From assembly GCF_030028105.1 (NCBI RefSeq), contig NC_092398.1, forward strand, positions 28,552,424-28,616,423: a stretch of DNA of 64,000 nt. The letters run 5' to 3'. Positions 1-40,458 of this stretch are shown here, in pieces. The translations under genes were made by a program, and so were the position numbers. This DNA is from Mobula birostris (lineage: Eukaryota). Position 1 is the stretch's first letter, and every line of letters starts with the position of its first letter. The notes beneath the pieces are model-generated. The model was not told where the DNA came from. It searched no databases and saw nothing but the letters and a program-made list of their open reading frames with translations.

Positions 1-1884
1 GTTAGTCATTCAGGGACCAACAGACATACATTTGGACCAGAATCTGGCCATTCAGCCCATTGAGTCTGCTTTGCCATTCCATTGTGGCTGACTTATTATA
101 TGTCTCAATCCCATTCTCCGGCCTTCTCCTCGTAACCTTTGACACCCTTGCTAATCAGGCCCCTGGTTTAAATATACTCAATGACTTGGTGTCCACAGCC
201 CCATCTGCGGCAATGGATTCCACAGATTCATCACCCTCTGGATAAAGAAATTCCTTTCAATATCCAATAGGTTTCAGTGAGATCTCTCGAACCCGCCCCC
301 CTGCCCCGCGGCTCCTAATTCTTCTAAACTCCAGCGAGAACAGGCCTAGAGCCATCAAATGTGCCTCGCACACTAATCCGTTCATTCCCAGGATAATTCC
401 TGTGAAGTTCCCCTGGATCCTCTCCAATGCCGGCACATCACTTCTTCGAGAAAAGGCCCAAGACAGTTCCATTTTCCCAGGCCAGACTTGCCTAATGCAA
501 GGGAGCATAACGTTAAAGTGACTGGAGATGTTAGGGTCAAAAACAGATGGTGTGTCCTAGCTATCGTTATACGCAAGCCAGGGCAGTACGATATGGGGAG
601 CAAGCTGTTACCCATGTAACAGGCTTCCCCTCTCTACGCAGCTGATGAATCCAAAGGAACGGCAGACGCCGATACCGTCAGGCATCAGCAGCACCGCAGG
701 CGTTGCCAGTCAGTGCTGAAATCAACGTCGGACTGTCTTACGGACTCCAGCTCTGGATTTTCCCCTTGGGGTTTACTCCCCATGAGTGGGTATAGCCCCA
801 AGGCATCAGAGGTTTGAGATCAGAGTTTTCCTTCTCCTATACCAGCTTCCAATGTCGGCCGATGAACCCCATCTGCCTGATGCAGAGGTAGTTTTTTAAA
901 CACAGACTATGTGGGTATGTGGAACACCCTGCCAGGGGCAATGGGAGAGGAAAATTCCTTAAAGACATTTAAGGAACTCAGATGGATGATAGAAAAATGG
1001 AGGGTTACATTGGAGAGAAGAGTTAGATTGATCTTAGAGTAGGTTAAAACCTTGCCACAACATTGAAGGTCGAAGGACCTGTTCTGTTCTAAGTTCCATT
1101 TTCTATGTAAAGATGCTCACGATACTCCAGTTGTGGTCTGACCAATGCAGATTCAGGTATTGGTCAGATGACACTTGGAGTATCCAGGGAGCCTGAGTTC
1201 GATCCGGACCTGGGGTGCTACCTATGTGGAGTTTGCAAGCTCCCCCTGTGAACACGTGGGCTTCTGCAGGATTCTCCAGAGTCATCTCCATGTCCCCAAG
1301 CTGTGTTCGGAGATTAACGAGCCAATGTAGGGTCAAGGATCAATATTATTCACCATAGGAATCCGTTAGTCTCGTGAGACCATGGATTTGCGCCTTGGAA
1401 GGTCTCCAGGGTGCAGGCCTGGGCAAGGTTGTATGGAAGACTGGCAGTTGCCCATGCTGCAAGTCTCCCCTCTCCACACCACCGATGTTGTCCAAGGGAA
1501 GGACAAGGGCTGATACAGCTTGGCACCAGTGTCGTCGCAGAGCAATGTGTGGTTAAGTGCCTTGCTCAGGGACACAACATAAATACATAAATATCAGCAT
1601 GCATTTACAGTGTAAACAGCATTATAAAATTGGTTTGAAGTGTTTACCGGGCGATGATGAAGTAATAGATAGAGGGGGTGGGGGAGGTAACTAGAATGGT
1701 CGATCAGATTAACTGCCTGGGGGAAGAAACTTTTAAGATGGTGTGAACGCTTTGTTTTAATAACCCTAGAGCGCTTTCCACAAGAATAAATTAGTGTTTT
1801 ATTTCTATTCTGACATGTTCCAGCACCTGTCCAATGAACTTCGCTAATTCCCATGATATTAATCTTTAAACAGGAGGAAATCTG

Positions 1885-2025
1885 CAGATGCTGGAATTTT
1901 GAGCAACACACATAAAAGTTGCCGGTGAACGCAGCAGGCCAGGCAGCATCTATTGGAAGAGGTACAGTCGATGTTTCGGGCCGAGACCCTTCGTCAGGAC
2001 CCTTCGTTAGTCCTGACTTCGTTAG
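1885..2025 (-). mobile_element. Penelope-like element end with hammerhead motif
   Basis: Same block as the copies at 19.6, 26.2, 46.2, 62.3 and 62.8 kb. Minus strand has CTGACGA-AGGGTCTCGGCCC-GAAAC. Confidence 0.8.
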
Positions 2026-2048
2026 TCTATCAATTGCAAAAAGACAGA

Positions 2049-2715
2049 ATGTATGGTGATATCCAAAAAGAAGGAGAACTCTGTCTGCAGACTGAGAATA
2101 AACGGGGAGGACATAAAACAAGTAAAGAACTTTTGCTACTTAGGAAGCTGGGTGACATCAGATGGCAGGTGCGACATGGACATCAAAAGAAGAATAGGGA
2201 TGGCAAAAGACACCTTTACGAGAATGAAGAGTATACTGACCAACACTAAACTAGGCATGACAACCGGCTTCAGAGCACTGAAATGTTACGTTTATCCAGT
2301 TACGTTATGTGACTCAGAATGTTGGACAATATCTAGTAACATGAAGAAATGAATTGTAGCAGAAGAGATGTGGTTTTTGAGGAGGATGCAAAGAATATCA
2401 TGGACAAAATGGATATCTAACGAGATGTCATGAACAGAGCAAACACAAAAAGAGGAATAATGTATGTGATCATGAAAAGGCAAGGTGCCTTCATTGTACA
2501 TGTGATTAGGAAAGAGGAGTTAGAATGCATGGTAATTATGGGAAAGATTGAAGAGAAGAAAGCAAGAGGAAGGCAAAGACAAATGATGATGGAGACAGCA
2601 GCCAGAGAGCTGGAAATGAATACCAATGAATTGATCCACTTGACCCGAAACAGGAGCGTGTGGGGCCATGGCAGTCAAAGCTCAAACTGGGCATGGCACC
2701 TGATGATGATGATGA
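2049..2715 (+). mobile_element. RTE-clade LINE, 5'-truncated 3' end
   Basis: FCYLGSWVTSDGRCDMDIKRRIGMAK RT C-terminal region and a (GAT)n tail at ~2701; near-identical to 58610-59285. Confidence 0.85.
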
Positions 2716-5450
2716 GAGCGCTTTCCAGAGGGGAGGGTCCGCGAGGATTTTTCCTGCACACTTCTTTGTCCTGGACACACACAAGTCCTGCAGTGATGGT
2801 AAACTGCAGCCAATGCAGGGCACTGCCCTCACAGTTCGCTGTAGTTGTTCTTTACTGTGCGAGGATACAGTGAGATGATTGCTGGTTTCTTAGGAGGTTA
2901 AGAAAACTCTGCTTGTCACTGACCATCCTAACTTCTGTCGAGAGTGTCCTGGCTGGTTACATCACGGCTTCCATGCGCAAGAATAGAAGGAGCTGCAGAG
3001 ATTAGTGGACTCAAGCCAATGCATCACAGGCCCACCCCTTCTCACCATCAGTAGTGTTTGCCTCAGGAAAGCAACATCAAAGATTGCTGACCACTCAGGG
3101 CCACACCATCACTGCGCAGCTCCCATCGGTACTGGAGCCTGAAGTCCCACCCCACCAGGTTCAGAAACAACGACTTCCCTTCAACCATTCGGTTCTGCAA
3201 CTGACTGGCACAACTCTGATCACCACCTCGGTACAGTAACTGACCTTGATTACCGCTGGATCATGGTGTAGAAATATCTCTATTTTTCCCTTTCAGGGTT
3301 CTTTTGAAGACGCTGACCCGAAGTTACACGCTGACTTCGGTTCTTTGCGGGAATGGAACCCGCTCCCGGGGTCTCACGACTGGCCGCTATTCGATATGCC
3401 AAGGACGCGGCCTAGAAGACTCGCGAGCCTTCAGGGTTCCGGGATTTCATGGCTCTGCAGGCGGGCGGACTCGAGGTCAGTGCCTCAGCGGGAAATTGGT
3501 GTGTCATAGGAGCACACAGAAGATCGAAAGCAGAGAGCTGGCTGCTGGCTGTGTGCCCAGAGACCCGAGCTCTTTGGGCACAGAGCTCGGAAAAAGCGAC
3601 GCAACAGACTTTTAACACCATAAATCAGCGAGTGGCTTTGTTATGTCTCCCCTCTCGCTGTGAAACGGGGACATCTCTTTTTCCCTTATTAGGGAGAGAG
3701 AGAGAGCCTGTGGTATGTTGAATACCGGGTGAAGGAGTAGTCTTTGGGCTACTACAAGTCTGTCTCTTTATTGATGCTTTGCTGCTGCTTGTGCGTAGGA
3801 GGGGGAGCTGGGGGGGGCGGCTTTGGGGTTCCTCTGTTATCGTGGATGTTTGTGAAGAAAAAGGATTTCAGGATGTATATTGTATACATTTCTCTGCCAT
3901 TAAATGTATATTTGAGAATTGCTACCTTTCTTGTATTTCCCTTGTAGTTTAACATTCTTGAGCTTGCCTTTTACATAATCACCTGATCAGTGATTTTTCC
4001 AGCAATTACGGTATAGTGTTTCTCTATTTTTCTGGAAGCTTCCTATTTTGTCATGCCACTTGAATCCAGCTATTTATAGGTTGTTATCTCCAGACTGAGT
4101 ATGTCCTTTGTTCTATGGAATGCTGAAAGGCCTCGACAGAGTGGGTGTGGAGAGGGTGTTTCCAATGGTGGGGAGAGTCTAAGACCAGAGCACACAGTTT
4201 CAGATTGGAGGGGCGTCCTTTTTGAACGGAGATGTGGAGCAATTTCTTTAGCCAGAGAGTGGTGAGTCTGTGGAATTTTTTGCCACAGATGGCTGTGGAG
4301 ACAAAGTCATCGGGTGTGTTTAAGGCAGAGGTTGATAGGTTCTTGATTAGTCAGGGCATGAAGACAGGAGACTGGGGCTGAGAGGGAAATGGATCGGCCA
4401 TGGGGAAATGGCGGAGCAGACTCGATGGGCCAAATGGCCTAATTCTGCTCCAATATCTTATGGTCTTTATTAAGTACACCCGCTTGATAATATAAATATC
4501 TAATCAGCCAATCACGTGGCAGCAGCTCACTGCATTAAAAAGTATTTTTCGTAAAAGAGTTTCAACACACTGACTGCTTTTCAAGATACTTTTTCGAACG
4601 AGCTAGTGTAAGTTTCCTTCTGTCCCGTTACACTGAAGGACTTTGAGTCAAGGCAAACTATTTATTTGACTTTACCAGGGGTGACAAAAGGGTGTTGCAG
4701 GGTTGCCAGGGCTCCCTAGTTGTAAAGGAGAAAAGCTCAGATTGGATTATTTTCAGATGAAAAGCAAGGGTGTAATGTTCAAGCTTTAGAAGGCATTGGT
4801 CAGACCACACTTGGAGCATTGTGAACAGTTTTAGGTCCCTTATGTGTTGGCATTAGAGAAGGTCGAGAGGAGAATGGTCCTGGGAATGAAAGGGTTAATA
4901 GATGAGGAGCATTTGATAGCTCAGGCATGTACTTGCTGGTGGTTAGGAGAATGATGGGGGATTCTCAGTAAACCTATTGAATATTGAAAGGCTGAGATAA
5001 TGGATATAAAGAAGGTGTTTCCAATGGTGCGGGAGTCTAGAACCAGAGAGCATATAAGAAAAGGGACACTTTAGAACAGAGATGGATAGAATTTCTTTAG
5101 GCAGAGGACGATGAATCTGCAGAATTCATTGCCACAGATGACCGTGGAGGCTGAGTCACTGGGTAGATTTAAAGTGGAGGTTGTTGTTTAGTAATGGCAT
5201 TAAAGGTTAGGAGGAGGAGGCAGGAGAATGGGGTTGAGAGAGTAATAAAAAGACCAATCGAATGGCAGAGAAAATCCGATGGGCTGAATGGCCAATTAGT
5301 GTTAAATCAGCCATCTTTGTATGGAGACTCAATGGGCCCAATTCTGCTCCTCTGTCTTACAGTCTTATTGCCACCACTAAGCCAACTATGTAAAGCAAGT
5401 CCCTTCAACATCAATAAGTTCCAAGTTACCCCCACTGACAAAGCACTCAC

Positions 5451-5511
5451 CAATTTCCTCTCCCGTTGCCATGGGCAATAGCAGGGCCATTAAGAAGCCG
5501 AATAGGTCCAT
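5451..5511 (-). CDS. Leader (signal peptide) exon of a divergently oriented gene; candidate MHC W-category alpha chain (WA) exon 1
   Basis: Minus strand reads ATG GAC CTA TTC GGC TTC TTA ATG GCC CTG CTA TTG CCC ATG GCA ACG GGA GAG GAA ATT G|gtgagt = MDLFGFLMALLLPMATG-EEI. It has a hydrophobic core, an A-x-G cleavage-type motif, a consensus donor and phase 1, and sits in non-repeat DNA. WA identity is inferred only from its head-to-head position. Confidence 0.6.
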
Positions 5512-5929
5512 GTCTGCGGATGGCTCCTCTCTCCAGGAGCAATAAAAAGATGTGAACTGGGACTGTCCTGTTTATGAACGGGGCTTAGATTTTTGCTGGC
5601 TACATAATTCAACTCCGCTGCTAGCGTGTCGATTTCATGAGTAACATTAACTTGACAGCTACAGTAACAATCCTCAACTGGCAGCGGTTAAGTTCTCAAA
5701 CCGGTTCTTCAGGAAGTAGCACGTTTAAACATGCTTTCAGGAAATTTTAGAGAACACAGATCAGAGCAGTTATTGAAAGTGGGGATTTTGGCAAGTTAAA
5801 GTGTTTTGTGAAGTCTGCCCGCAGTTGTGTTTGGATTTACTTCACAGGATGGCTGATCTTGTCACGGAATTAAATCATGCCACATTCCAATTGACTTATC
5901 ACGTGTGCATTGAAACATTACTCAATGGC

Positions 5930-6290
5930 TACTTTATTAGATACCTGCTAAAGTGTTTGTTTGTGGTCTTCTGCTGATGTTGCCCACCCTCTTCAAGGTT
6001 TGACATGTTGTGCGTTTAGAGATGCTCTTCAGCACACCACTGTTGTAACGCGTGGTTATTTGAGTTGCTGTCGCCTTCCTGTCAGCTTGAACCAGTCTGG
6101 CCATTCTCCTCTGACCTCTCTCATTAACGAGGCGCTTTCGCCCACCGAGCTGCCGCTCTATGGATTTCGTTTTGTTTATCACACCGTTCTCTGTTAACTC
6201 TAGAGACAGTTGTGCATGAAAATCCCAGGAGATCAGCAGTCTTTGAGATACCCAAATCGTAACCATCTGGCACCAACGGTCATTCCACAG
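5930..6290 (-). mobile_element. Tc1-like transposon fragment
   Basis: RMARLVQADRKATATQITTRYNSG is a Tc1 HTH region; homologous copy at ~24370-24690. Confidence 0.75.
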
Positions 6291-7555
6291 TCAAGTAGTA
6301 ATTTAGATTACATGTATTTCGAGATCGGCCCTTCCTGCCCTTTCGAGCCGCACCACCCAGCAACCCCCGATTTAACTCTGGCCTAATCGCAGGATAATTT
6401 ACAATGGCCAATTAACCTACTGACCAGTAGGTCTTCTGACTGTGGGAGGTAACCAGAGCATTGGGAGGAAGCCCACATGGTCACGGCGAGAATGTACCTT
6501 ACCAGCAGCGGCGGAAATTGAACCTGGGTCGCTGGTACCGTAAAGTGTTGTGGAGGCAGACTTCTTCCTCTGAGTTTGGGCGAGACTAGAATTAGATATC
6601 GTGAGCTGCAGGTTGAAACGTTTAAGTGGAACGAGGGGCGGATCCTCTTCACTCAGAGGGTGGTGAAAGTGTGGAACGATCTGCCAGCAGGAGTGGTGGG
6701 CGTGGGTTTGGTTGCAACACTTGGGAAATTTGGGTGGGTACATGGACGGCAGGAGTAATGGAGGGCCAAGGTCCAGGTGCAGGTTGATTGGGCTAGGCAG
6801 AATAACAGCTCGGCTTGGACTAGATGGGCCAAAGGGCCTATTTCTGTACTGGATGACCACCCGTCATCCAGAACATCCTCAAGAGGTGGTGCCTCAAGAA
6901 GTTGGCATCTGTTGCCACTCTCTGGGACGTGCCCTTTTCTTGTTCATACCATTGGGGAGGAGATACAGGAGCTGACAACACACACTCAATGATTCACAAA
7001 CTTCTTCCCCTCTGTCACTGGAGTTCTGAATGGACATTGAACCCGTGAGCAGCACCTCATTATTCCCTTGTCTGGTTTTTGCACCAGGGACGGTGGTAGA
7101 GTCAGATACATGAGGAACCTTTAACACAAAGACACATGGATAAAAGAAACATGGAGGGGCGCGTGGGAGGAAAGGGTTAGATTGATCTTGGAGGGTTTGT
7201 GAGGTCAACCCAACAATGTTCACAGTACATTTATTATCAAAGTATCTATACTTTATACAACCTTGAGATTCGTCTCCTTATATGCAACCACAAAACAAAG
7301 AGACCCAAAAAAACAAATTTAGAGCAAAAGACCGACAAACACCCAATGTGGTGAGAGAATAAAAATAACAAATTATGCAAACAACAAAAGTAAGTAAATA
7401 GCATTTAGGATGAAAGCGAGTTCTCAGAGACGACGCCCAGCCATTTAGCCCATCGAGTCTACTTTGTCAGTCAATCCTAGCTAATTTAGCACGCCTCTCA
7501 ACCCCGTTCCCCTGCCTTCTTTAATGCCCTTATCGATTGAGAACTTATCCAACTC

Positions 7556-7735
7556 GGCACGGTAGTGTAGCGGTTAGCGTGACACTTTACAGAACCAGCG
7601 ACCTGGGTTCAATTCGCACTACTGTCTGTAAGGAGTTTGTACGTTCTCCCCGTGACTGCGTGGGTTTCCTCTGGGTGCTCTGGTTACCTCCCACCATCCA
7701 AAGATGCACCGGTTGGTAGCTTGGTTGGTCATTGG
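7556..7735 (+). mobile_element. tRNA-derived V-SINE (HE1-like)
   Basis: tRNA-like head followed by the V-domain-type core GTTCTCCCCGTGACTGCGTGGGTTTCCTCTGGGTGCTC. Related copies at ~1170-1330, 6400-6540(-), 8350-8540(-), 14470-14690 and 35470-35650(-). Confidence 0.75.
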
Positions 7736-8638
7736 GCTAGGATTAAGTCATGGGGCTACAGGATGGAGTGGCTTGAGGGCCAGAAAAGCCTGTTCCACTC
7801 TGAATTTCAACCTCCGATTAAAAATTACATATCAGCCTCCGCTTTAAATGACTGTATGTGGCAACAAATTCCACAGATTTACCACCCTCCAGCTAAACCA
7901 AATCCTCCTCAACTCTGTTCTAAAGGGGTGTCCTTCTATTCTGTGAACCTAGACTTCCCTCCCCCACCCCGACATTGGAAACATGCTCTCCACGTCCACT
8001 CTGTCTAGGCCTTTTAATATTTGGTAGGTTTCAATGAGACCCCCCTCATTCTTCTAAACTCCAGCAAGTGCAGGCCCAAAGCCATCGAGCGCTCCTCGTG
8101 GTTAACCCTTGCAATCCCAGGATCATTCTCGTGAACGTCCTCTGGACCCTCTCCAAGGCCAGCACATCCTTCCTTAAATAAGGGACCCAAAACTGCAAGT
8201 TCGGTCTGACCAGTGCCTGGTAAAGCGTCAGCATTACATTCTTCCTTTAATATTCTAGTCCTCTCGAAATGAATGAATGAACTATTATTATTGAGATACA
8301 GTGTGGAATATACTGCTCATGAACCCCCATATTTCATCCTACCCTAATCACAGGACAATCTACAAAGACCAATTAACCTACCAACTGGAAAGCCTTTGCA
8401 ACGTGGCAAGGAATTGGAGCATCCAGAGGAAAATCACACGGTCTCGGGTAGAATGCACGAACGCCTTACTGGCAACAACGGGAATCGAACCTGGGTCACC
8501 TATACTGTAAAGTGTTTTGCTAACCACTACGCTACCAGGCTGTGTATGTAACACACATTTTCCTTCCTCACCCTGCAAGTTAACGTTTAGGGAACATCTA
8601 ATTTCTGAATTTGCTCTCACCGTTTAGAAAATAGTCTA

Positions 8639-9143
8639 CGAAGCGTGATTGATAAGTTCGTGGCTAGAAGGAGAAAATTTTAGAAAACTTAGCACATTCA
8701 TTTTTCCTACACTTACACACTTAGTCCAGCGGCCGTGGAGCATACGGATCCCTTCTTTGTAGAAGTCGGCGTCTTGGACCTCCAGAAAGTGGTCCACAGC
8801 AGGGATCATTGATAAGTTCATGGCCTAAGGTAGAAGGAGATGAGTTATTAACTTCAAACTTTCTGCATAATCACTCAAAGAGTTGAGCTGCACATGCATG
8901 TAACGAGAGCTGTATAACTCATCTCCTTCTACCCCAGGCCGCAAACTTATCAATCACCCCTGCTGTGGACCATTTTCTGGAGGTTCGAGACGCCGATTTC
9001 TACAAAGAAGGGATCCGTATGCTCCACGACCGCTGGACTAAGTGTGTACGTGTAGAAGGGGACTATGTTGAAAGATAAATGTGCTAGGTTTTCTAAAATT
9101 GACTCCTTCTACCTTAGGCCACAGACTTATCAATCCCTCCTCG
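8639..9143 (+). mobile_element. Non-autonomous mariner element
   Basis: TA-flanked inverted ends CGAAGCGTGATTGATAAGTT / ACTTATCAATCCCTCCTCG. Internal remnant FYKEGIRMLHDRWTKCVRVEGDYVEK is the mariner transposase C-terminus. Confidence 0.85.
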
Positions 9144-9485
9144 TATGTCTTTATTCCTTCTGCCAAAGTGCAGGACCATACACTTCACTAGGCTATATTT
9201 CAGCTGCCTCTTCTTTGCAACCTCCACTTTATATATACCCGATCCTGGAACATTTTAGGCACAGAACGCCAGATAGAAGTATACAAAGGAAAGGAAATAA
9301 ACACTTGAAGTCATTAGGAGACAAGCAGGAGGCTGGTACAGCCTGCTCCCGGGGGGTGGAGTCAGGTGAAGTCCAAGGAATCCAGAACAGGTTTGCTCAG
9401 TACAATTGCTCAGCTGGTCCACCTCACTTCAAATACTCACCTGTTTCACTCAGACGCATCAGAGAGCCCACTATTGCCTCCAAAG

Positions 9486-9558
9486 ATGAGTGTTTGCTGC
9501 AGGTTGGCCTTCGCGGCTCTCCTAGCTGAAGTGGTCTCTGTCGCGGCCATCCAGAGCG
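9486..9558 (+). CDS. MHC beta-type chain (candidate W-category WB), exon 1: leader
   Basis: caaagATG start, MSVCCRLAFAALLAEVVSVAAIQS, then G|gtaagt donor; 73 nt, phase 1, joins in frame to 11370. Confidence 0.85.
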
Positions 9559-10339
9559 GTAAGTTGGCTCAAGTCCTCTGGCACGCCACCGGACTGTCTG
9601 CCCGTAGGTCTGCACCTCGGACCGTCTCCTAGCACAGGCTGCGAGGAGAATTGGGGAGCTCTGAGCCACACCAGATTGGAGGCGGGGGGCAGGGGATTGG
9701 TTAGAAGCTGTTCAAAGTTAGGAGAGACTTTGATAATGTTCATGGTGGGAAGCTGTTCTCACAACCCGGTGATTCAGTCAGAAAGAAACAGGGAAAGGTA
9801 AACTAGAAACTGGTAAAGAAAAAAAAACATGATTCTATATTGTCTCTCTTTTAAACCAGATTTCTGGAGACAGATAGACAGGAAGGGTAACACACACAAA
9901 GAACTCAGATGATTAAGATGGCGCAGGCGGCAATTCGCGGGCGGCTCAGAAAACTTCTAGATATACAGTGTTTCTTCTGAAGTGTTATCGCTGCAGTCTG
10001 CAGCCTGTAATTTCTTTTTTAGGTTGTTAGTTGTTTTGTTTTGCATTTGCAGTTTACCTTCTTTGCCTGTCTTTAGCTTGTGTATAGTTTTTCATTGATT
10101 CCTTTGTGTTTGACTGTGAATGCCCGCAAGGAAATGAATCTCAGGGTGGTACGACATAGATGTACTTTGATAAATAACTTACTTTGACGTCTGGTGGAGA
10201 GAAATAACCTGTTGATGTATCAGGCTGTGACGATGACAACAGTGAGTGAGTGTGTGTGTGTGTGTGTGTGTACAGGGTCTGCATTTCCAGTACCTACAGG
10301 GTCTCGTGTCAGGAAGGGTCCTCACAAAGATCTCACTCT

Positions 10340-11369: not shown

Positions 11370-11642
11370 ATATGCACCTCTTTCACGTCCAGTGTGAGTG
11401 TCTCTTCCGTGGCCTTGAAGTGGACGACATACGCTTACGTTACGCCTATGATGGTGTTACTATCATGTACTACAACATGGAAATTAAGAGGTATGTTGCA
11501 GCCCAGCCCATGGCGCAGGCTGAGGTAGACAGGCGGAACTCGGAGCACGACTATGTTACATTGGTGCCTCACCGAATTGAGAGCATCTGCAATGAGATCA
11601 AACAGGCGGTCAGATCAAGCAACATCACCCTGGAAAACATGG
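11370..11642 (+). CDS. Candidate WB exon 2: membrane-distal beta1 (class I alpha2-like) domain
   Basis: ttcttttag acceptor, G|gtaaga donor, 273 nt, phase 1/1. DMHLFHVQCEC...RYAYDG...YVAAQPMAQAEVDRRNS...ICNEIK...NIT. Cys pair at domain positions 11 and 74, as in MHC beta1/alpha2 domains. Confidence 0.92.
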
Positions 11643-23898: not shown

Positions 23899-26408
23899 AA
23901 TGAGAGCCACAAGATAACAGACAGTACAGAGTATACTTTATATAGACTGTGTATTTATCATATCATTCCTGCTTTTACTATATGTTAGTGTTATTTATTT
24001 TTGATTTTATGTGTTATTTGGTATGATTTGGTAGGTTATTTTTTGGGTCTGGGAACACTCAAAAGTTTTTCCCATATAAATTAATGGTAATTGCTTCTTC
24101 ACTTCACACCATTTTGGCACAGAAGGTTTCATAGGAACGCTCTACCTTAGCGGGGGAAATACGGGACAAGGGCGGTCCCATATGGGACAAACCAATTTAG
24201 CCCAATATACGAGATGTCCCGGTAAATACGGGATGGTATTTGACCCTATGTTCAGGTTCAACAGTGCGTGACAGGGAATGAGGAAAGGTGCAGCTGACTC
24301 ATATCGTTTCCTCATGGCCTGGTAGCACATGCTTTGTGGCCCGGTACTGGTCCGTGGCCCGGTGGTTGGGGACCGCTGCTATAGCCCATCCACTTCAAGG
24401 TTCAACATGTTGTGCGTTCAGAGATGCTCCTCTGCACACCACTGTTGTTACATGTGGTTATTTGAGTTACTGTTGCCTTCCTGTCAGCTTGAACCAGTCT
24501 GACCATTCTCCTCTGCCCTCTCTCACTAACAAGGCATCTTCACCAACAGAACTGCCGCTCTCTGGATGTTTTTTGTTTTTCACACCAATCTCTGTAGACC
24601 GTTGAACATGAAAATCCCAAGAGACCCAGCAGTTTCTGAGGTACTCAAGCCACCCCGTCTGGCACCAACAATCATTCCACGGTCAAAGTCACTTAAAGCA
24701 TTAACAGAATGCAGAATAAAGTGTTACAGTCACAAGGACACTGCCGAGCAGGGAAACAATAAGGTGCAAAGCCACAATGAGGTAGATTGTGAGGTCAAGA
24801 GTCCATCTTATCATACTAGGGATCTGGTCATTAGTCTTAGCGCAATGGGATAGAGTACCTGATGGGAGGGGAAGATTATGTTGGCTACTTCACCAAGGCA
24901 GTTTGAGTATCAAGTCTTCTGCCATTGGGGAGGAGCTGCAGGAGCTGAGGATATAAATGAATACCTCCAGATGTCACAGAGATACGATGAGTGGAAAACT
25001 TGCATTTAAAACAGAAAATTGTTGGGATTTTCATGGAAATAAAACTCACCGAACGTTCCCGAGATGTCGGAGTCCAGCTTTGCATTCTGTGAAGGAAGAA
25101 CGAATGAGATTAAATATTGAGATTACTGTGATTTAAAAAAAACATGAAGCATTTCACAATGTGTTTGGTGGAGAAGATGCTGAACAAGGATTCTCAGGTG
25201 CGGAGTGCCGATTAAAAGTTCACGGTCAAGGGAGGAATGTTGTCCAAGTTCCCTAGCAGATTCTGTTGTTACTCACAATGCTTTCAGGAATTTGGTTTCA
25301 AGCTGGTTTTTCATGTGAAAGATGATATCGGGAACCATAGAAAGCTCTCTCTCTTGAGAGAAAGTCTGTCAATTTAGTCCACATTCCATCAGTCTCAATC
25401 ACATTCCATCAGTTTCATCCATATTCCAGCAGTCTAATCGAAATTCTCTTAGCCTACTTCATGTTCTATCAATCTCGTCTAGTCTGCATATAGTCAGTCT
25501 GATCTAAATTCCATTAGCCTGGTCCACACTTCATGAGAATCAGATGAATCAGGTTTGTTATCACCGGCATGTGACGTGAAATTTGTTAACTTAGCAGCAG
25601 CAGTTTAATACAATACATAATCCAGCAGCGAGGGAGAAAAAATAATAATAAATAAAAATAAAACATAACAAACAAACAAGTATATCAATTATGTATATTG
25701 AATAGATTATTTAAAAAATGTGAAAAAACAGAAATACTGTGTATTAAAAAAAAGTGAGGTAGTGTCCAAAGCTTCAATGTCAATCTAGGAATTGGATGGC
25801 AGAGGGGAAGAAGCTGTTCCTGAATCACTGAGTGTGTGCCTTCAGGCTTCTGTCTCTCCTACCTGATAGTAACAGTGAGAAAAGCACATGCTCTGGGTGC
25901 TGGAGGTCTTTAATAATGGACGCTGCCTTTCTGAGACACAGCTTCCTAAAGATGTCCTGGATACCTTGTAGGCTAGTGCCCAAGATGGAGCTGACTAGAT
26001 TTACAACCTTCTGTAGCTTCTTTCAGTCCTGTGCAGTAGCCCCTCCATACCAGACAGTGATGCAGCCTGACAGAATGCTTTCTCTGGTACAACTGTAGAA
26101 GTTCTTGAGTGTATTTGTTGACATGCCAAATCACTTCAAACTCCAAATTCTATCAGTCTGGTCCACGTACCATCAAGCTAGAATATGTTCCATCAATCAG
26201 TCACCACTGATTAACAGAAACCCTTTCTCCAGTCCTGCCGAAGGGTTTCGGCCCGAAATGTCAACTGTACTTTTTTCCACAGATGCTGCCTGGCCTGCTG
26301 AGTTCCTCCAGCATTTCGTATGGGTTGCTCGTATTTCTAGCATCTGCAGATTTTCTCTTGTTTGTGATTCAATAACTTGCAGTCTTCTGCTCTCCAATTT
26401 CTTCACAG

Positions 26409-26678
26409 CTCCTACCCATACCAGAGCCTTCATGCAGAAGAAACGGGGTCAAATGTACCTGGTGTGCACGGCCAGGAACTTCTTCCCCCGGGACATTAAA
26501 GTGCGGTGGGTCAGAAACGGGGAAGTCACTGACAATGGATCAGACACGACCAACGTTGTCCCTCAAAGCAATGGAGCCTTTCAAGTTAGGAGCGTCCGCC
26601 CCCTGGATGGAGACAGCTGGGGGTACGTCTGTCAGGTGGAACACGAGGCAGTCGATGGGAAGTTGCAGATACCTCTTG
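26409..26678 (+). CDS. Candidate WB exon 3: C1-set Ig domain (beta2, class I alpha3-like)
   Basis: tttcttcacag acceptor, G|gtaaga donor, 270 nt, phase 1/1. LVCTARNFFPRDIKVRW...VVPQSNGAFQVRS...YVCQVEH are MHC C1-set motifs. Confidence 0.95.
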
Positions 26679-28044
26679 GTAAGAACAGCGAGTTGGGGAA
26701 ATGTCGTCTGATGCGATAAAAAACATTGATATCTACTTGATGACACAGAATCCCTCATCGTCCCTTTCTGTCCCCAAGTAAGTCCCAATAGCTTGAGACC
26801 TCTCTCATTGTCTATGCTGCTGGCGATTATTATAGTCAAGTCATACAGCTGAATACAAGGCCATTTAGCCCAACACATCCATACTAACTAACAATCACCC
26901 GTCCACACCGACTCTCCTCACTGAGGCTCATTGCCTTTTGTGGCGGAGGGTCTTGTGAGATCCTGAGATTCTGAGAGCGAGATGCCGGTGGGAGCTTGGC
27001 TCCTGGTAGGGTCACCCATTGTGGTGAAGGTGGGGGGAGATTCCAGATAAATGGCAGATGGAGTTTAACCCAGCTCGATGTGAGGTATTGCATCTTGGTA
27101 GGGCAAATGTAAAGTGACAGTACACCGTGTTGCTGAGCAGAGAGATCTTGGGATTCAAGTTCATAGGACTTTGAAAGTGACTACACAGGTGGTTAGGAAG
27201 GCTTATGGAATGCTTGCTTTTATTAGTCAAGACATTGAGTTCAAAGGTCAAGAGGTTATGTTGCATAAACTCTGGTTAGGCCACATCTGGACTACCGCAT
27301 ACAGATCTAATCATCAGGAAAGATGTTGAGGCTTTGGAGAGGGTGCAGAAGAGGTTTACCAAGATGCTGCCTGGTTTAGAGAGCATGTGCTATCATGGAA
27401 AGCTGGGCAAACTTGGGTTGTTTTCTCTGGAGTGGCAGAGGCTGAGGGGAGATCTGAGAGAGGTTTACAAGATTATGAGCAGCAGAGATGGAGTGGACAA
27501 GGGGGTGAGTACCTGTTTTCCAGGGTTGAAATGTCTAATTCCAGAGGGCATGCATTGTAGGTGAGAGGGGCTAGGTTCAAGGGGGATATGAGGGGTAGTG
27601 TTTTACTCAGAGTTGTGGACGCCTGGAATGCGCTGCCTGGTATGGGGGTAGAGACAAATACATTAGAGGCTTTTAAGAGATGTTTGGATAGGCACATGGA
27701 TGTAATGGAGATAGAAGGATATGGACATGGTATAGGTCAGAGGGATTAGTGTTTGATGTAATTTTTAGTTGGTTCAGCACAACATTGTGGGCCAAAGGGC
27801 CTGTTACTGTACTGTCCTATGTTCTAAAGAGCGTTTCAACTGAGATCTGAGTGGTGGAGCTGGCAGAAGATGATAACACATGGCAGCAGCAATGAAGGCA
27901 GGGGAAGGCTGCAGTGGTGAAGGATCCCCAGTCGTTTTGCATTCCAGGCCACGGGACCCTGACCCCGATCTGCCAAGGACCATGTGGTGGCTGCCAGTGC
28001 ATCAGCCTCCCCACACAGAGCCACTCCTAGATGATCTCCTTTAG

Positions 28045-30737: not shown

Positions 30738-30851
30738 AACACAACGCACTGGTTGAGAATGAAGATTTGATCATTGTTGGAGTTGTTCTGGGGGCACTCG
30801 GGCTGTGCGCAATGGTGGTGACTGGAAGCTTGTACTGCTGCTCCTCAGAGG
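30738..30851 (+). CDS. Candidate WB exon 4: connecting peptide and transmembrane segment
   Basis: ttttctcctcag acceptor, G|gtaagt donor, 114 nt, phase 1/1. EHNALVENEDLIIVGVVLGALGLCAMVVTGSLYCCSSE. Confidence 0.9.
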
Positions 30852-31930
30852 GTAAGTGGCTGCGAGACTTACAGAGAGGCTCAGGGAACAGTCACCGGAC
30901 TGGTTTCTGCTAAAGTGCTTCAAGAAAGGATCAAACTTCTCTTTGATGAACCACTGGGGAGCCACTCCCATGGAGCACCTTCTCTGGGTCCATCACCAGA
31001 GGCAGGGTTTCCCAGTGGCCACCCATTTCAATCCCACTTCCCATTCGCACTCCCTCCCATCTAGAGCGGAGAGCTGACCAGCTGCGTCACGGCCTGGCGT
31101 GGAAACCCCAGTGCCCAGGAATGGAAAGGCCGACAGAACGAGGAGGATACAGCCCAGTGGTTCCTTAAGGTTGCCATAGCCGGGGTGGGCCAAGGTGGGG
31201 ATGAGCTCCCACTACCCATTAAGTGGCCTCAGTCATGGCGGAGACTAGGCCAGAAGCCACAGTGTCACCTGTTAGCAGCTGCCCAGGGGGAGTGTCCATG
31301 ATGGGGTGTCTATGCTTGAGTCAGGGCTGCCATTCCCCCCCCCTCCTCCCCCTTTCTCCACCCCTCCTGCACATCCCCAGTGATTTTTGGATAGAAGACA
31401 AGCCATACTGTACTCGACTGCAGACTGCTGCAATGTTCATGGACCCAGGGGCTTGGACTACCCTTTTTGGGTGATTGTATTTTACTGCTATCTTACAGTA
31501 CTGTGAAAAAGCCCTCGGCACATATAGGTGCGGAAGACGTTTGCACGGTGCGGTATTTGTCAATGTGGAGTGGACAGCGAGTTTGTAAATCTGGCGGGAG
31601 CAAAGGATGTTGGGAGTGGTGAGGGTGGCGTGTGGGACAGGTGGCAGAGAAGGAGTTGCCAGGGGAAAGAGAGGGGTGGCATGGATGCAGACACACCCAG
31701 CCCTGAGACACCAGGCAAGGTCATTTGATTCTAAACAATTGGTTTATTGATCATTACAGAATGACTCTCCTGTGCTTCCCGCTCCCTTCCCTCTCCCTTC
31801 CTCTTTCCCCAACCATGATTCCCCTCTCCCCGTCCCCTTCCCACTCTCACTCCACAATAGAGATCCACATCAGAATTATGAAATCATGTCATGAAATTAC
31901 ATTTTTTTGCAGCAATATATAAAACTACTA

Positions 31931-34076: not shown

Positions 34077-36166
34077 TATATGTGCTATATGTACCTTAGG
34101 CTGCGTATGACTGTTGGTGCTATGTTTTGCACCTTGGATCCAGGGTAACGCTGTTTTGTCTGGCTGTATTCACGTATGGTTGAATGACAATTCAACTTGC
34201 ACTTGAAATACGCCCAGTGGTGTGTGTCTGAAGTAGCCTCTGACATTCAGCTCCAGCTCCCGGCCTTCCTGTGTGGCTTAGCTACTAAGCCTAGTGGAAC
34301 CATTTTTACTGACAGGAGAAGGGGCAAAGGCGGGTTGTTGGCACCTGAAAACTGGTTGCTCTAGGCTTGTCAGCCATGGCTGGTAGCTCACCTAGGAGAA
34401 GGAAAACTCTGATCTTAAACCTCTGCTGTACCCACTCACCAGGAAGGAAGGCTTTGGGAGTAAACTCCCGAGGAAAAATCTGGAGCTGGATTCATCACGG
34501 CAGTCCTATGTTGAGTTCAATAATGACTGTGATATCACTGGTGCCCAAACATATCGGTCTCTACTGTTCCTTTGGATTCATCTGCTGCATGAGAGGGGAA
34601 GAGAGCCTACTGCACAGGCAACAACTTGCTCTCCATATTGTACTGCCCTGGGCTGTCCATCTAGGACACAAAGTCAATGGTCGATCCCAAACAAACGAGG
34701 GCCTCCCAAAGCCCAGTCCATCGCAGGATAAGCCCTCCTCAGCATTGAACACATTTACAAGGAGTGCTAGCACAAATAAGCAGCATCCATTATCAAGGAT
34801 CCCCACCATCCAGGCCATGTTCTCTTCTCGCTGCTGATATTGGGAATGAGCCTCAGGACCCACACCACCAGGTTCAGGGTCAGTTATTACCCCTCAGCCA
34901 TCAGGCTCCCGAACCAGTGTGGAAAATTTCATTCACCTCAGCGCTGAACTGATCACTGAACACGGATCTGTGGACTCACGCTCAAGGAGTCTACAGCTCA
35001 TGTTCTCAGTATTACTTATTTGTTTGTTGTGTGGCCCTGATTCTTTAATGCTATTGTGTGGTGCCTTTGGGATGAAACCATTTGTAGTGTGAACATTATC
35101 GGGACATGATGGAGTGGTGACAATGATTCCATGAGCCAACTGGCCTAATTCTGCTCCTATACCTTATGGTATAACTTCTCCACACAGAAAGGGTGGTGGC
35201 TATACGAAACGAGCTGCCAGGTGGTGCTGTAGAGGTGGGTACATTTGCAATGTCTAAAATGCATGGACAGGAAAGGTTTGGATCAACGTTGGCCAAACAC
35301 AGGCAAGTGGGACGAGCTTACATAGACAATTGGTTGGCATGGATGAGTTAGGCCAAAGGACCTGTTTCTATGGGATATAAATCTACGACTCGATCGATGT
35401 ATGGTTTATTTTTTTTTAGATGTAGAGATACAACATGGTAACAGGCCCGTGCTGCCCAAATGCACCAAGTGACCAATTAACCTGCTAACCTGTATCTGTT
35501 TGGGTTTTGGGAGGAAACCGAGTACCTGGAGGAAACCATGTGGTCACGGGGAGAAGGTACAAACTTCTTGCAGACAGTGGCGGGAATTGAACCCGGGTCA
35601 CTGGCGCTGTAATGGCATTACATTAACCATTATACCACTATGCCACTCCAGTGTAGCAAAGAGCTTCGTATTTTCAGTGCTAAAGGTAGGAAAATCTTTA
35701 AAAAAGCAATAATTTAGATGAAAGAAATTGACATTTTTGGTTGACGTATTGAACATAGAACAATGCAGGCCCTTACAGAAGTGATCGAAACAAGAGATAT
35801 CCAGACAGAGTGCAAAGTGGGAGGGTGTTCCCATTGTCAGCGGGGTTAAAGTTCAGAGGTCACATGGATACAACATAAGGAGAAGAGAATTCAGGAGAAA
35901 TTTTTCCGCATGGTGCGGTCAGAATCTCGAAGGCTCTGTCAGCAGGTGCGGTGGAGGTGAGCACCACTGTGGCTTTGGAGGGTGAATTGGCTAAGGACAT
36001 GTTAGAAAAATGTGCCGTGGGGAGATGGGGTGGAGATGGGGAAGTTCTCTGGCAGAGAGCGGTCAAAGACACGATGGGATGGCAAGCCCTGTTTTTCTGC
36101 TGGAACTACTCTGATTTTTCTTTTCAGGCTTGTTGTCAACCATCTGATCTCTTGTTTCTCCCACAG

Positions 36167-36196
36167 GGGCAAAAGTGCTGAACTCTCAGCAGACAG
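36167..36196 (+). CDS. Candidate WB exon 5: 30-nt cytoplasmic mini-exon (GAKVLNSQQT)
   Basis: Strong acceptor tctcttgtttctcccacag and donor CAG|gtgaga; symmetric phase 1, preserves the frame. Confidence 0.65.
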
Positions 36197-39021
36197 GTGA
36201 GAAAAATCAACGCTGGTGTCGGGACTGGGGGGGGGGGCGGAAGTCTTCAAAATGTCTATGTGGTGAAGGAACTTAGATCAATATTACATTAGATTATGAG
36301 GACACGCAGTCCTCTTTTATTGTCATTTAGTAATGCATGCATTAAGAAATGATACAATGTTCCTCCAGAATGATATCACAGAAACACAAGACAAACCAAG
36401 ACGGAAAAACCGACAAAAACCACATAATTATAATATATAGTTACAACAGTGCAAAGCAATATCGTAATTTGATAAGAACAGACCATGGGCACTGTAAAAA
36501 GAAGTCTCAAGGTCTCTAGAAAGTCCCATCATCTCACGCAGACGGTAGAAGGAAGAGAAACTCCCTTCCTGCCATGAGCTTCCAGCGCCGCAAACTTGCC
36601 GATGCAGCACCCTGGAAACACCAGACCACAGCCGACTCTTGAGTCCGTCGGAAAACTTCGAGCCTCCGACCAGCCCTCCAACATGGAGCACTGAGCACCA
36701 TCACTGCCGAGCGCTTCGACCCCGGCTCCAGCAACAGGCAACAGGCAATAGGCAAAGCCGAGGATTTGGGGCCTTCCCCTCCGGAGATTCTCAATTGCAC
36801 AGTAGCAGCGGCAGCGAAGCGGGCATTTCAGAAGTTTCTCCAGGTGTTCCTCCATGCTTCTCATATCCACCTCCATCAAATCAGGATTGTGCACAGTACC
36901 TACTTACAAATACGATATCATTTCGGAGCGGCCGCGCGCGCTGCGTCACGCCACCACCTTTTCCTCCCCTCCCCATATATTCGCTGGTATTCAGAAGAGT
37001 GAGAGGGAATCTTATAGAAACATGCATATAAAGTTATGAAAGGAGAAGATAAGGCAGAGGCATAAGACCATAAGACAACGGAGCAGAATTAGGACATTTG
37101 GCCCACTGAGAGTCTGCTCCACCATTCCGTCACGGCTGATTTATTATCGCTCTCAATCCTGTTCTCCTGCCTTTTCCCTGTAACCTTTGGTGCCATTACT
37201 AATCAAGAACCTGTTGACCTCCATATTAAATATATGCGTGACTTGCACACATGGTGATGAAAAGTTTATGTCCTTTGATGATAATAAATTTACTTTGAAC
37301 TGGCACGGAAGAGAGGAGAGGAGGTGTGGGGTAGATCAGCCATGACTGACAGGGCAGAATTGAGGGGCCGAGTGGCCTACCTGTGCTCTTTGTCTTGATG
37401 TAATTGCCATGGATGTCGGGGTGGAGATACGTCTCTACCAACGGTGGTGTAAGGTGCTCCTTCCCTCCGCTGGCCTGCAGGGCACCCTTGGGCAAGGTGT
37501 AGCACCTGCTTAGCCCCCGATCAGGGTCCTGTGAAGCCATGGGAGCAGGTGGTGGACGGTCGTATGAGCAACTGGTGCATATCACAAGTCTTGGTTGTGT
37601 GACCACTGATACCAGGCAGACAATCTCTAAAGAGTATTGGTGGGGCGGGGGGGTGGGGGTCACCCGTCTTGTAAGGACACTGCCCAGAAAGCGGCAATGG
37701 CAAAGCACGTCTGTAGAAAAATTTGCCAAGAGCAATCACGATCGTGGAAAGTTCCACCTCATCTGACACGGCACATAACGAATGAACGATTCACTTTGCA
37801 GGGCTCAGGAGGGCTTATTGCTAACCTGAGCCTTCTACTACAGCAGCGCGACCCTTCCAAGGGTCAAAGAGTTGTCACTGATAAAGTTAAACTTTGAACC
37901 AACATTTCTTGCTCAGCCTCTTGTAAACAAGGAACAGTGGAGTCCACGTTGGCCTAGTGATTGAAGAATAGGAATTTATTTAATCTGTGGGACTCATTGC
38001 TACTGATGGCTGTGGAGACCGAACTTTGTGCATATTTAAAGTGGAGGTTTGATAGGTTGGGCACGTGGCCCAGTCGTTAAGGCATTTGTCTAGTGATCTG
38101 AAGGTTGCTAGTTCGAGCCTCAGCTGTGGCAGCATGTTTGTGTCCTTGAGCAAGGCACTTAACCACACATTGTTCTAGTGTCTGTGCGAGGAGTGGCACC
38201 CCACACAGACTTTCAATCTGCACCTCGAAAGGCATGAAAATGCCCGACACAGGCCTCTCATGGTCTGAGTTGACGTTCCCTCCCTCCCTCCCCCCCTTTG
38301 ATAGGTTCTTGATTAGTAAGGGTGTCAAGACTGCAGCTAGCGGGGCAATATCTACGCCACCCCGAGCTACCTGCCAGCCTAGTCATCATATGGGAGCCCA
38401 AGCACGGGAGGATGAACCCTGGGCGCCCTCCCAAGACTATGGTCAACACGCTCCTAGAAGAGAGCGGCGCGGCTAATGTAGATGAACTGAACACACTGAT
38501 GAGGGAGAGGGAGAAGTGGAGAGTTTGTCATCGTGCCTGATGCCGGCCCCTTAGGCCTGAGTTGACGTGGTGGTAGTAGTAAGGGTGTCAAAGGTCACGG
38601 GGAGAATGGGGTCCAGAAGGATGAAAATCAGCCAGTTGGTCTGAAATCCTCTGTCTTATGGTCGTATGGTTTTATGGCAGGGTGTTGTTCGATTTCATGC
38701 CCTATGGTGCATCGGGTGGCATTTTTGGCGTTTCCGTAGCATTTGACTATTTTTTTGCGAGGCAGAGTTGGCGGCTTGACACAGAAAGTGTGCAAAGTGC
38801 TGGCCGGATTTGAACTCAGGACCATTCGCCTCGAAGTCCAGTGCTGATGCCAGTACACCATGGGCCAGCTTTTATGGCAGGATGATACAAGCCTAGGACA
38901 AGAAGGATCTTGGGGATACTTACCTCAGATAGGGCTTAAAGTTTTGACTTAAGTTTGGAGCTTAACAGCACTCAATATCACTGCATCCTACAAGATGTCC
39001 GTTCTTTCTCTCTCTGTGCAG

Positions 39022-39120
39022 CAAAGTTCAATAACCAGGGGGGACTGTGCCGGTTGAACACGTGCAGTGCGAGCGTTCGGTCCAGTGACTCTGGCGTCTC
39101 CAATTCCAGTGCCAGCTCAG
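39022..39120 (+). CDS. Candidate WB exon 6: Ser-rich cytoplasmic exon
   Basis: ctttctctctctgtgcag acceptor, CAG|gtaccg donor, 99 nt, phase 1/1. AKFNNQGGLCRLNTCSASVRSSDSGVSNSSASS. Confidence 0.75.
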
Positions 39121-39199
39121 GTACCGGTGTGCTTGTAAACCAGCCTACTCAGCGACCGGCTCCTCCATTTCAGCCAAACCACCATCACTGGCACTCACC

Positions 39200-40010: not shown

Positions 40011-40458
40011 GGGGATTTAGATCGGACCGCAATCTCCACCCACCCCACCAGCTTGTAGTCACGGTCAGGGGCCAGAGGCAGATGACGCTCCCGCTCTCCC
40101 TCCCCCCCGCCCCCGGTGCGGTCCAGCGGCCAAGGCACACTGCGCCAACGTCCAGAGGAAAGGGAGAGCTGGGGCAAGAGGGAGGCCTTAATGCCTGCAG
40201 ACCCCGGAGTCTGGAGCAACAAACAATCTGCTGGAGAAGCAGGACAGCATCCGAGGGAGGAAAGAGGTTCCTTGAAGTTTCGGGTCTCGGCTCAAAGCGC
40301 CAAGAATTCCTTTCCTTCCACAGATGCTGCTCAGCCGGTTGTGATCTTCCAGCACATTGTCTGTGGCTGAGGGAACAAGACTTCAACGACTCTTTGTATC
40401 TTGCCCGTCTGTCGCGAGAGTTTCTGATCCACCGGCCATTGTATGTTCTTCTTTTCAG

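What the first reader, a model, noticed from the sequence alone, without database searches (positions are those of the whole stretch)
5451..9558. Second leader exon head-to-head with the WB-like gene: candidate WA partner sharing a ~4-kb divergent promoter region
Seen: a minus-strand exon too short for the ORF track encodes MDLFGFLMALLLPMATG-EEI and ends in phase 1 at a consensus gtgagt donor. Its ATG is 3975 bp from the WB ATG, in divergent orientation. The acidic mature start resembles class II alpha leader exons (e.g. DQA ...G-EDIV). From recollection of the literature, W-category alpha and beta genes are reported as head-to-head pairs. Inference: this is exon 1 of the partner alpha chain, with its alpha1/alpha2/TM exons left of position 1; I found none in 1-5450.
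Basis: partly seen in the sequence, partly recalled or inferred. Interest (0 to 1): 0.8.

Follow-up and report, generated by a model that had tools for sequence, protein, structure and literature searches.

The report
First exon of manta WA gene
The short minus-strand exon is real: it is the signal-peptide exon of a W-category MHC alpha-chain gene (WA_DS5 lineage) of a manta ray, head-to-head with its WB partner, but the gene is already in the public annotation and the arrangement was described in 2021, so the finding is correct and ordinary.

Summary
Observation confirmed. On the minus strand there is an ATG at 5511, then 20 codons (MDLFGFLMALLLPMATGEEI) plus one base, then gtgagt at 5450. 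This ATG lies 3975 bp from the WB ATG at 9486.

Interpretation supported.
- The 20 residues are identical to the N-terminus of the RefSeq protein XP_072102696.1 of Mobula birostris (255 aa). That protein is 61% identical over its full length to banded houndshark WA_DS5.
- Its Ig domain carries the beta2-microglobulin-type DW(T/S)F tryptophan.
- Orthologous exons 1 in a sawfish and a sevengill shark have the same one-base phase-1 end and the same donor. The sawfish leader also has 20 codons, the sevengill shark leader 21. About 300 bp upstream is conserved.
- One contig of a probable RNA run matches 5451-5606 exactly. It leaves the genome precisely at the predicted donor, with 308 further letters.
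- The other WA exons are not in the window.
- The head-to-head pairing with a WB_Nds5L-type gene recurs in five elasmobranch species.

The "shared 4-kb promoter" claim is only partly right. Conservation is limited to about 200-350 bp next to each gene, and the spacer between them is mostly interspersed repeats.

Everything here is already annotated or published (Okamura et al. 2021). Interest is low.

The parts
5451..5511 (-). Coding part of WA exon 1: ATG, 20 codons (signal peptide MDLFGFLMALLLPMATG plus EEI) and the first base of codon 21 (phase 1)
   Evidence: sequence; 20/20 identity to P0008 residues 1-20. P0008 continues with V (G+TT) FKSVSERLYYSY; orthologous exons in Pristis and Heptranchias.
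5445..5450 (-). Splice donor gtgagt of WA intron 1
   Evidence: The donor and the following bases (gtgagtgctttgtc) are conserved in Pristis and nearly so in Heptranchias. The X1 contig stops matching exactly at 5451.
5512..5606 (-). Minimum 5' UTR of WA exon 1 (the transcript contig reaches 5606; the true start may lie further upstream)
   Evidence: a 464-nt contig of run X1 lies on 5451-5606 with 0 mismatches, using contig positions 309-464. The contig ends at 5606.
5607..5800 (-). Conserved proximal promoter block of WA, including an invariant TTCCTGAA motif and TAAAAT at about 5744-5749
   Evidence: Alignment A1: 73% mean column identity across Mobula, Pristis and Heptranchias. blastn 5396-5759 against L001 5981-6368, E 4e-52.
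1..5444 (-). Part of WA intron 1, which continues off the left end of the window. Mostly interspersed repeats, with one block (4560-4741) colinear with Pristis intron 1
   Evidence: no further P0008 exons here; gene span 11,676 bp; 4560-4741 matches L001 5784-5960 at 69.5%; zero depth on unique stretches and high depth on repeats.
5801..9281 (.). Spacer between the two promoters: mostly transposon-derived repeats, including a reverse-transcriptase-like ORF at 8014-8234 and a repeat fragment at 6865-7069 shared with Pristis
   Evidence: most bins in 5973-9124 have word depth in the thousands from many short contigs at 90-95% likeness. LINE-type ORFs; non-colinear or inverted matches typical of repeats.
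9282..9485 (+). Conserved proximal promoter / 5' UTR block of WB (invariant GGGTGGAGTCAGG at about 9350-9365)
   Evidence: Alignment A2. blastn 9282-9817 against L001 9797-10363, E 6e-38.
9486..9558 (+). WB exon 1 (leader MSVCCRLAFAALLAEVVSVAAIQS plus 1 base, phase 1, gtaagt donor)
   Evidence: matches the leaders of P0001 (M. hypostoma) and P0003 (Hemitrygon).
11370..11642 (+). WB beta1 exon (DMHLFHVQCEC...; WB_Nds5L-type signature)
   Evidence: acceptor tttag and donor gtaag, phase 1 at both ends; 97% identity to P0001 residues 23-113. Dataset S1 rows for WB_Nds5L.
26409..26678 (+). WB beta2 (C1-set) exon with P57 and G61 in place of the class II tryptophan (VVPQSNGAFQ)
   Evidence: Pfam C1-set E 4e-15.
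30738..30853 (+). WB connecting peptide / transmembrane exon (approximate ends). Cytoplasmic pieces follow near 36157-36222, 39018-39131 and 40455-40484
   Evidence: tblastn of P0001 and P0003.

Best explanation
Window 5606-5451 (minus strand) is exon 1 (5' UTR plus signal peptide) of the manta ray ortholog of the W-category MHC alpha-chain gene of the WA_DS5 lineage, RefSeq protein XP_072102696.1 (255 aa). The exon encodes a cleavable signal peptide. Cleavage is inferred after A-T-G17, from the small residues at -3 and -1. The exon splices in phase 1 across an intron of roughly 7 kb to the alpha1 exon, which lies beyond the left end of the window; alpha2 (beta2-microglobulin-like C1-set) and the CP/TM/CY exons follow. 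The gene is transcribed divergently from its WB_Nds5L-type partner, whose exon 1 starts 3975 bp away. By analogy with the tiger salamander WA/WB experiments of Okamura et al. 2021, the two chains are inferred to form a class II-style heterodimer. Each gene has its own conserved proximal promoter of about 200-350 bp, and the DNA between them is mostly transposon debris. Shown: the exon, its splice donor use, its identity with the annotated protein, its orthology, and the head-to-head synteny. Inferred: signal-peptide cleavage site, intron length, heterodimer formation, promoter function.
For: Sequence as described. 20/20 identity to the N-terminus of P0008 = XP_072102696.1 of Mobula birostris. 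P0008 is 61% identical over 253 aa to houndshark WA_DS5 BBJ00839.1; the TM segment of that protein matches the WA_DS5_n1_01 row of the paper's dataset. P0008 has a C1-set domain but no MHC_II_alpha Pfam hit. Its alpha2 aligns best, as a single domain, to beta2-microglobulin, with DWTF over DWSF. A 464-nt contig of run X1 matches 5451-5606 perfectly; its other 308 letters match nothing in 1-5450 or 4200-10100, so it leaves the genome at the predicted donor. Pristis exon 1 also has 20 codons plus 1 base, the same donor context and a conserved 5' UTR, followed 3.85 kb later by a WA_DS5-type alpha1 exon. The annotated gene span of 11,676 bp agrees with earlier scan notes that place the alpha-chain exons 1.7-6.5 kb left of the window. 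A head-to-head WB neighbour is present in Pristis (3899 bp), Hemitrygon (4170), Hypanus (4078) and Heptranchias (1787). The pairing WA_DS5L/WB_Nds5L is reported for great white shark (SI Fig. S11 legend), and the WB beta1 here carries the WB_Nds5L signature.
Against: The downstream WA exons are outside the window, so I could not read them in this assembly. The letters of the spliced contig beyond the donor were not displayed, so I did not see directly that it joins alpha1. Run X1 is only guessed to be RNA. Position 57 of alpha2 is V, not the F/Y given as typical of WA; houndshark WA_DS5 also has V there. No evidence here bears on protein expression or WA/WB pairing in manta.
Confidence: 0.93

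Rival explanations
1. The exon is a genuine WA leader, but the gene copy is non-functional (a decaying duplicate), like other WA copies the scan reported elsewhere in this genome.
For: Earlier scan notes describe broken or rearranged WA copies at other places in the same genome. The alpha exons of this copy are off-window and were not read here.
Against: RefSeq models an intact 255-aa protein from this exon, and its 11.7-kb span fits the neighbouring note of an 'apparently intact' alpha gene. A spliced contig exists. Exon 1 and the promoter are conserved across rays and a shark.
Confidence: 0.04
2. The 4-kb interval is one shared bidirectional promoter that co-regulates WA and WB (the title of the finding).
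For: The divergent orientation and a similar ATG-ATG spacing (3.9-4.2 kb) in four batoid species. Head-to-head pairs are typical of W-category genes.
Against: Conservation is confined to about 300 bp next to WA and about 200 bp next to WB. Most of 5973-9124 is high-copy repeat (ORFs). The only mid-spacer match to Pristis is a transposon-type fragment. In Heptranchias the interval is only 1787 bp. WB exon 1 had zero depth in the same runs that hold WA exon 1.
Confidence: 0.15
3. A chance ATG...GT open frame in repeat-rich spacer DNA, or the leader of a classical class II alpha (DQA-like) gene.
For: The exon is short (61 coding bases). Hydrophobic runs followed by GT occur by chance.
Against: Exact identity to an annotated protein, orthologous conservation and splice-exact contig evidence. 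The encoded protein has no MHC_II_alpha Pfam hit even at E<=1 and matches WA_DS5.
Confidence: 0.01

Closest known systems
WA_DS5 lineage of W-category MHC alpha chains (banded houndshark WA_DS5, BBJ00839.1; Okamura et al. 2021, PMC8713811)
   Same: Leader-only exon 1 ending in phase 1. A leader of the M-[D/E]-L-x-x-F-L type ending in ..EI. Protein 61% identical over its full length. Class II alpha architecture. Alpha2 with HIY, L55 and W61. Head-to-head with a WB_Nds5L-type gene.
   Different: Species (a mobulid ray; the paper covers sharks and little skate and does not mention manta or Mobula). Intron 1 is much longer (about 7 kb against 3.85 kb in Pristis). The intergenic spacer is about 4 kb and filled with repeats.
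RefSeq model XP_072102696.1, 'RLA class II histocompatibility antigen, DP alpha-1 chain-like' (Mobula birostris)
   Same: Identical first 20 residues. Gene span compatible with the window and with the neighbouring scan notes. This is the same gene.
   Different: The automatic name files it as classical class II DP alpha. The sequence features place it in the W category.
Classical MHC class II alpha genes (e.g. HLA-DQA1/DRA) paired with beta genes
   Same: Exon plan (leader / alpha1 / alpha2 / TM-CY, phase 1). Divergent or adjacent pairing with a beta gene. A short leader exon whose mature end is acidic.
   Different: No MHC_II_alpha Pfam match. Alpha2 carries the beta2-microglobulin-type tryptophan. 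No S-X-Y promoter consensus was found in the conserved upstream blocks; the paper's SI reports the same for the zebrafish WA/WB pair.

Membership tests
W-category alpha chain (WA), Okamura et al. 2021 | Class II alpha-type architecture: signal peptide, membrane-distal alpha1, C1-set alpha2, CP/TM/CY | tested here: met
   P0008 starts with this exon. It has C1-set at 116-196, aligns end to end with houndshark WA_DS5, and has the hydrophobic TM segment IIVCAVGV.... The domains other than the leader lie outside the window.
W-category alpha chain (WA), Okamura et al. 2021 | Alpha2 carries beta2-microglobulin-type interface residues: Y8, L55, F/Y57, W61 (paper numbering) | tested here: inconclusive
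   In the HMMER alignment to beta2-microglobulin, HIY is over QVY (Y8 met), the L of QLVV is over the L/M position (L55 met), and DWTF is over DWSF (W61 met). Position 57 is V, not F/Y; houndshark WA_DS5 also has V there. Three of four features are met.
W-category alpha chain (WA), Okamura et al. 2021 | Closest relatives are named WA sequences rather than classical class II alpha or DM alpha | tested here: met
   61% identity to BBJ00839.1 (Triakis scyllium WA_DS5). All seven hits of the alpha1 search are orthologs of this protein. No MHC_II_alpha Pfam hit at E<=1. No tree was built.
W-category alpha chain (WA), Okamura et al. 2021 | Gene lies head-to-head with a WB gene | tested here: met
   WA ATG at 5511 (-) and WB ATG at 9486 (+). 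The same arrangement is seen in Pristis, Hemitrygon, Hypanus and Heptranchias.
W-category alpha chain (WA), Okamura et al. 2021 | WA and WB products form a heterodimer | not tested
   Shown only for tiger salamander recombinant chains in the paper. No complex prediction or experiment was done here.
W-category beta chain (WB), WB_Nds5L lineage (the partner gene) | Beta2 lacks the class II W61 and has G61 and P57, as in class I alpha3. Beta1 has the WB_Nds5L signature | tested here: met
   The window beta2 reads VVPQSNGAFQ, with P four residues before G, and G where class II has W. Beta1 DMHLFHVQCEC...YAYDGVTIMYY matches the WB_Nds5L rows of Dataset S1. I placed P57 and G61 by eye against the paper's description.
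   Pfam scan of P0008 and P0013 at E<=1 returns C1-set (plus a sub-threshold Ig_3 hit for P0013) and no MHC_II_alpha.

The most novel reading that the evidence does not exclude
The WA_DS5/WB_Nds5L pair is driven by two compact promoter blocks that are conserved between rays and a hexanchiform shark (an old split) yet lack the S-X-Y module of classical class I and II genes. W-category genes would then sit outside the CIITA/NLRC5-RFX regulatory circuit, and the two partners may be transcribed unequally: WA exon 1 was detected while WB exon 1 was undetected in the same runs.
Probability: 0.3. Interest if true: 0.4.

Novelty: already known. Interest (0 to 1): 0.18.

Why it matters
The finding confirms that the first-stage reader can detect a 61-base leader exon and assign it correctly. 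It links the WA gene body noted on the neighbouring window to its first exon and to its WB partner. Biologically it adds a mobulid ray to the species that hold the WA_DS5/WB_Nds5L head-to-head pair. It also shows that the public names of the two genes ("DP alpha-1 chain-like"; "FcRn large subunit-like", a truncated model) hide their W-category nature. It does not change what is known about W-category MHC genes.

Tried and rejected
1. The OCR text of SI Fig. S1 of Okamura et al.. The leader rows were useful as a lead, but later blocks are visibly corrupted (identical rows), so I did not use them as evidence. I replaced them with database proteins P0007-P0013.

2. Seeing what the X1 contig joins to. 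The loose-end table was truncated and did not list place 5451, so the 308 letters beyond the donor were never read.

3. Fetching DNA for the Mobula, Hemitrygon and Hypanus loci. Only gene tables were obtained, so the left flank of this window could not be read.

4. The mid-spacer block 6865-7069, colinear with Pristis. I considered it as a shared enhancer. I rejected it as most likely a common transposon fragment: it has a repeat-type coding remnant, high word depth over most of it, and similar copies elsewhere.

5. A consensus scan for X1/RFX, X2/CRE, Y/CCAAT, ISRE and GAS in the 500 bp upstream of both genes in three species. No positionally conserved S-X-Y elements were found. This was a regex check, not a weight-matrix test.

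6. A resemblance of the WB upstream sequence to the DRA X2-Y boxes, seen by eye. I rejected it because it lies within about 45 bp upstream of the ATG and is not conserved.
Full report
**Observation.** Read on the minus strand, the window has an ATG at 5511-5509. It is followed by 20 codons (MDLFGFLMALLLPMATGEEI) and one further base at 5451, then gtgagt at 5450-5445. The plus-strand WB-like leader starts at ATG 9486 and ends in phase 1 at 9558 before gtaagt. The window contains no N.

**What the exon belongs to.** The beta2-containing open frame of the WB-like gene (26099-26716) retrieved annotated ray proteins: Mobula hypostoma, M. birostris, Hemitrygon akajei, Hypanus sabinus and Pristis pectinata.
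- The Pristis locus (L001) shows, 3899 bp upstream of the WB start codon and on the opposite strand, the start of a gene for a 254-aa C1-set protein.
- Its first exon reads MELVSFFMVLLLLTAAGAEI plus one base, followed by gtgagtgctttgtc. That is the same length, phase and donor context as the window exon, and the 5' UTR is clearly related.
- 3.85 kb further on lies an alpha1 exon of WA_DS5 type.
- Searching with that exon returned seven proteins. One is P0008, XP_072102696.1 of Mobula birostris (255 aa; name and accession). It begins MDLFGFLMALLLPMATGEEI and continues VFKSVSERLYYSY.
- tblastn places residues 1-20 of P0008 at 5511-5452 with 20/20 identity. It finds no other part of P0008 in the window except a weak Ig cross-match to the WB beta2 exon.

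The exon is therefore the annotated first coding exon of this gene, and the remaining exons are not in the window.

**Where the rest is.** The public gene table gives 11,676 bp from start to stop codon for P0008. That puts the stop about 6.2 kb left of the window start. This agrees with two unchecked first-stage notes on the neighbouring window. One reports an apparently intact W-type alpha gene ending 1707 letters before this window (s1-145237). The other reports a beta2-microglobulin-like alpha2 exon 3219 letters before it (s1-145766). Intron 1 is then roughly 7 kb; this is inferred, not read.

**Transcription and splicing.** Three runs of one study were laid on the region. They cover repeats heavily and leave unique stretches (for example 2851-3230, 3991-4180, 4561-4750) at zero depth. 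This is the behaviour of RNA rather than genomic DNA, although the runs are only guessed to be RNA. In run X1 a 464-letter contig (depth 9) matches 5451-5606 without a mismatch, using its positions 309-464. Its other 308 letters match nowhere in 1-5450 (at 99%) or in 4200-10100 (at 90%). The contig thus leaves the genome at exactly the base before gtgagt, which is what a spliced WA transcript would do. The 308 letters would be enough for the alpha1 exon plus the start of alpha2. The contig also shows that exon 1 extends at least 95 bases upstream of the ATG.

**Is it W-category?** P0008 is 61% identical over 253 residues to P0013 (BBJ00839.1, Triakis scyllium). The leader and transmembrane segment of P0013 match the banded houndshark WA_DS5 rows in the paper's supplement.
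- Pfam finds only a C1-set domain in both proteins and no MHC_II_alpha domain.
- Against solved structures, the best single-domain matches of the alpha2 region are beta2-microglobulin. HIY aligns over QVY and DWTF over DWSF. These correspond to Y8 and W61, the residues Okamura et al. give as class I-type marks of WA. L55 is also present. Position 57 is V rather than F/Y, as in houndshark WA_DS5.
- The partner gene has the WB marks. Its beta2 reads VVPQSNGAFQ: P57 is present, and G sits where class II has the invariant tryptophan.
- Its beta1 (exon 11370-11642) carries the DxHxFHVQCEC...YAYDGxTIM signature of the WB_Nds5L rows in Dataset S1.
- WA_DS5L/WB_Nds5L is one of the three head-to-head pairs described on the great white shark contig (legend of Fig. 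S11).

**Synteny.** The head-to-head pair recurs in five species.

| Species | ATG-ATG distance |
|---|---|
| Mobula (this window) | 3975 bp |
| Pristis | 3899 bp |
| Hemitrygon | 4170 bp |
| Hypanus | 4078 bp |
| Heptranchias (sevengill shark) | 1787 bp |

In M. hypostoma no neighbour is called upstream of WB. That is an annotation gap rather than evidence of absence.

**The "shared 4-kb promoter".** blastn of the window against the Pristis locus finds colinear conservation only in four places:
- 5396-5759, which is WA exon 1 plus about 250 bp upstream (E 4e-52);
- 9282-9817, which is the WB upstream block, exon 1 and the start of the intron (E 6e-38);
- 4560-4741, inside WA intron 1;
- 6865-7069.

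The last block looks like a common elasmobranch transposon fragment, and most of it has high repeat depth. Three-species alignments show an unusually well kept WA upstream block of about 300 bp, with an invariant TTCCTGAA and a TAAAAT about 140 bp upstream of the contig end. They also show a WB block with an invariant GGGTGGAGTCAGG. Most of 5973-9124 is covered by thousands-deep short repeat contigs and contains reverse-transcriptase-like open frames. A simple consensus scan found no positionally conserved X1/RFX, X2/CRE or Y/CCAAT elements upstream of either gene. The paper's SI reports the same absence for the 227-bp zebrafish WA/WB interval. The interval is therefore better described as two separate proximal promoters with transposon-filled spacer between them. 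Whether they share any regulatory input is untested.

**Novelty.** The exon is part of a public RefSeq model. The family, its exon plan and its head-to-head pairing in sharks and other fish were published in 2021 (PMC8713811). The increment here is small: the automatic names hide a WA_DS5/WB_Nds5L pair in manta, the M. birostris WB model (XP_072102616.1, 172 aa, starting in beta2) omits apparently intact leader and beta1 exons, and the promoters are deeply conserved without an S-X-Y consensus. The scan had already noted the WA gene body on the adjacent window and other, broken WA copies elsewhere in this genome.

**Verdict.** Observation confirmed. Interpretation supported (confidence about 0.93). 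Already known. Low interest.

Noticed in passing
window 9486-9558, 11370-11642 versus 26409-26678: The M. birostris RefSeq model of the WB partner (XP_072102616.1, 'IgG receptor FcRn large subunit p51-like', 172 aa) starts inside the beta2 exon. Yet the window holds apparently intact leader and beta1 exons that are 88-97% identical to the full-length M. hypostoma model. The public model looks truncated and misnamed.
   Followed up: partly
window 9322-9912 and 26415-26680: WB exon 1 and its surroundings had zero depth in runs X1-X3. The WB beta2 exon's words are held by the same study's runs (X4 0.96, X3 0.63, X1 0.59), and WA exon 1 is present in X1. This could reflect fragmentary assembly, a paralog's beta2, or WB transcripts that do not use this first exon. 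It is unexplained.
   Followed up: partly
window 5607-5800 (minus strand); L001 6103-6400; L002 9690-10000: The WA upstream block of about 300 bp is conserved between Mobula, Pristis and the sevengill shark (73% column identity including exon 1). It has an invariant TTCCTGAA motif. No S-X-Y consensus was found.
   Followed up: partly
window 4560-4741: A unique block (zero repeat depth) in WA intron 1 is colinear with, and 69.5% identical to, Pristis intron 1 (L001 5784-5960). It is a possible intronic regulatory element, displaced about 650 bp by a repeat insertion in Mobula.
   Followed up: no
window 59533-59790 (minus strand): The stretch flagged by another first-stage note as a disrupted MHC membrane-distal exon translates with three stops in the given frame. 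It gave no tblastn match (E<1) to the WA or WB proteins used here.
   Followed up: partly
L001 1553-1699 (Pristis, minus strand): In the Pristis assembly the open frame holding the start of the alpha2 exon (KKPTVHIYTEEHYAPQKSNALYCYA...) differs from the annotated protein P0007 (..[29 protein letters not shown]..) and stops early. It may be a second, decayed alpha2 copy between alpha1 and the used alpha2 exon.
   Followed up: no
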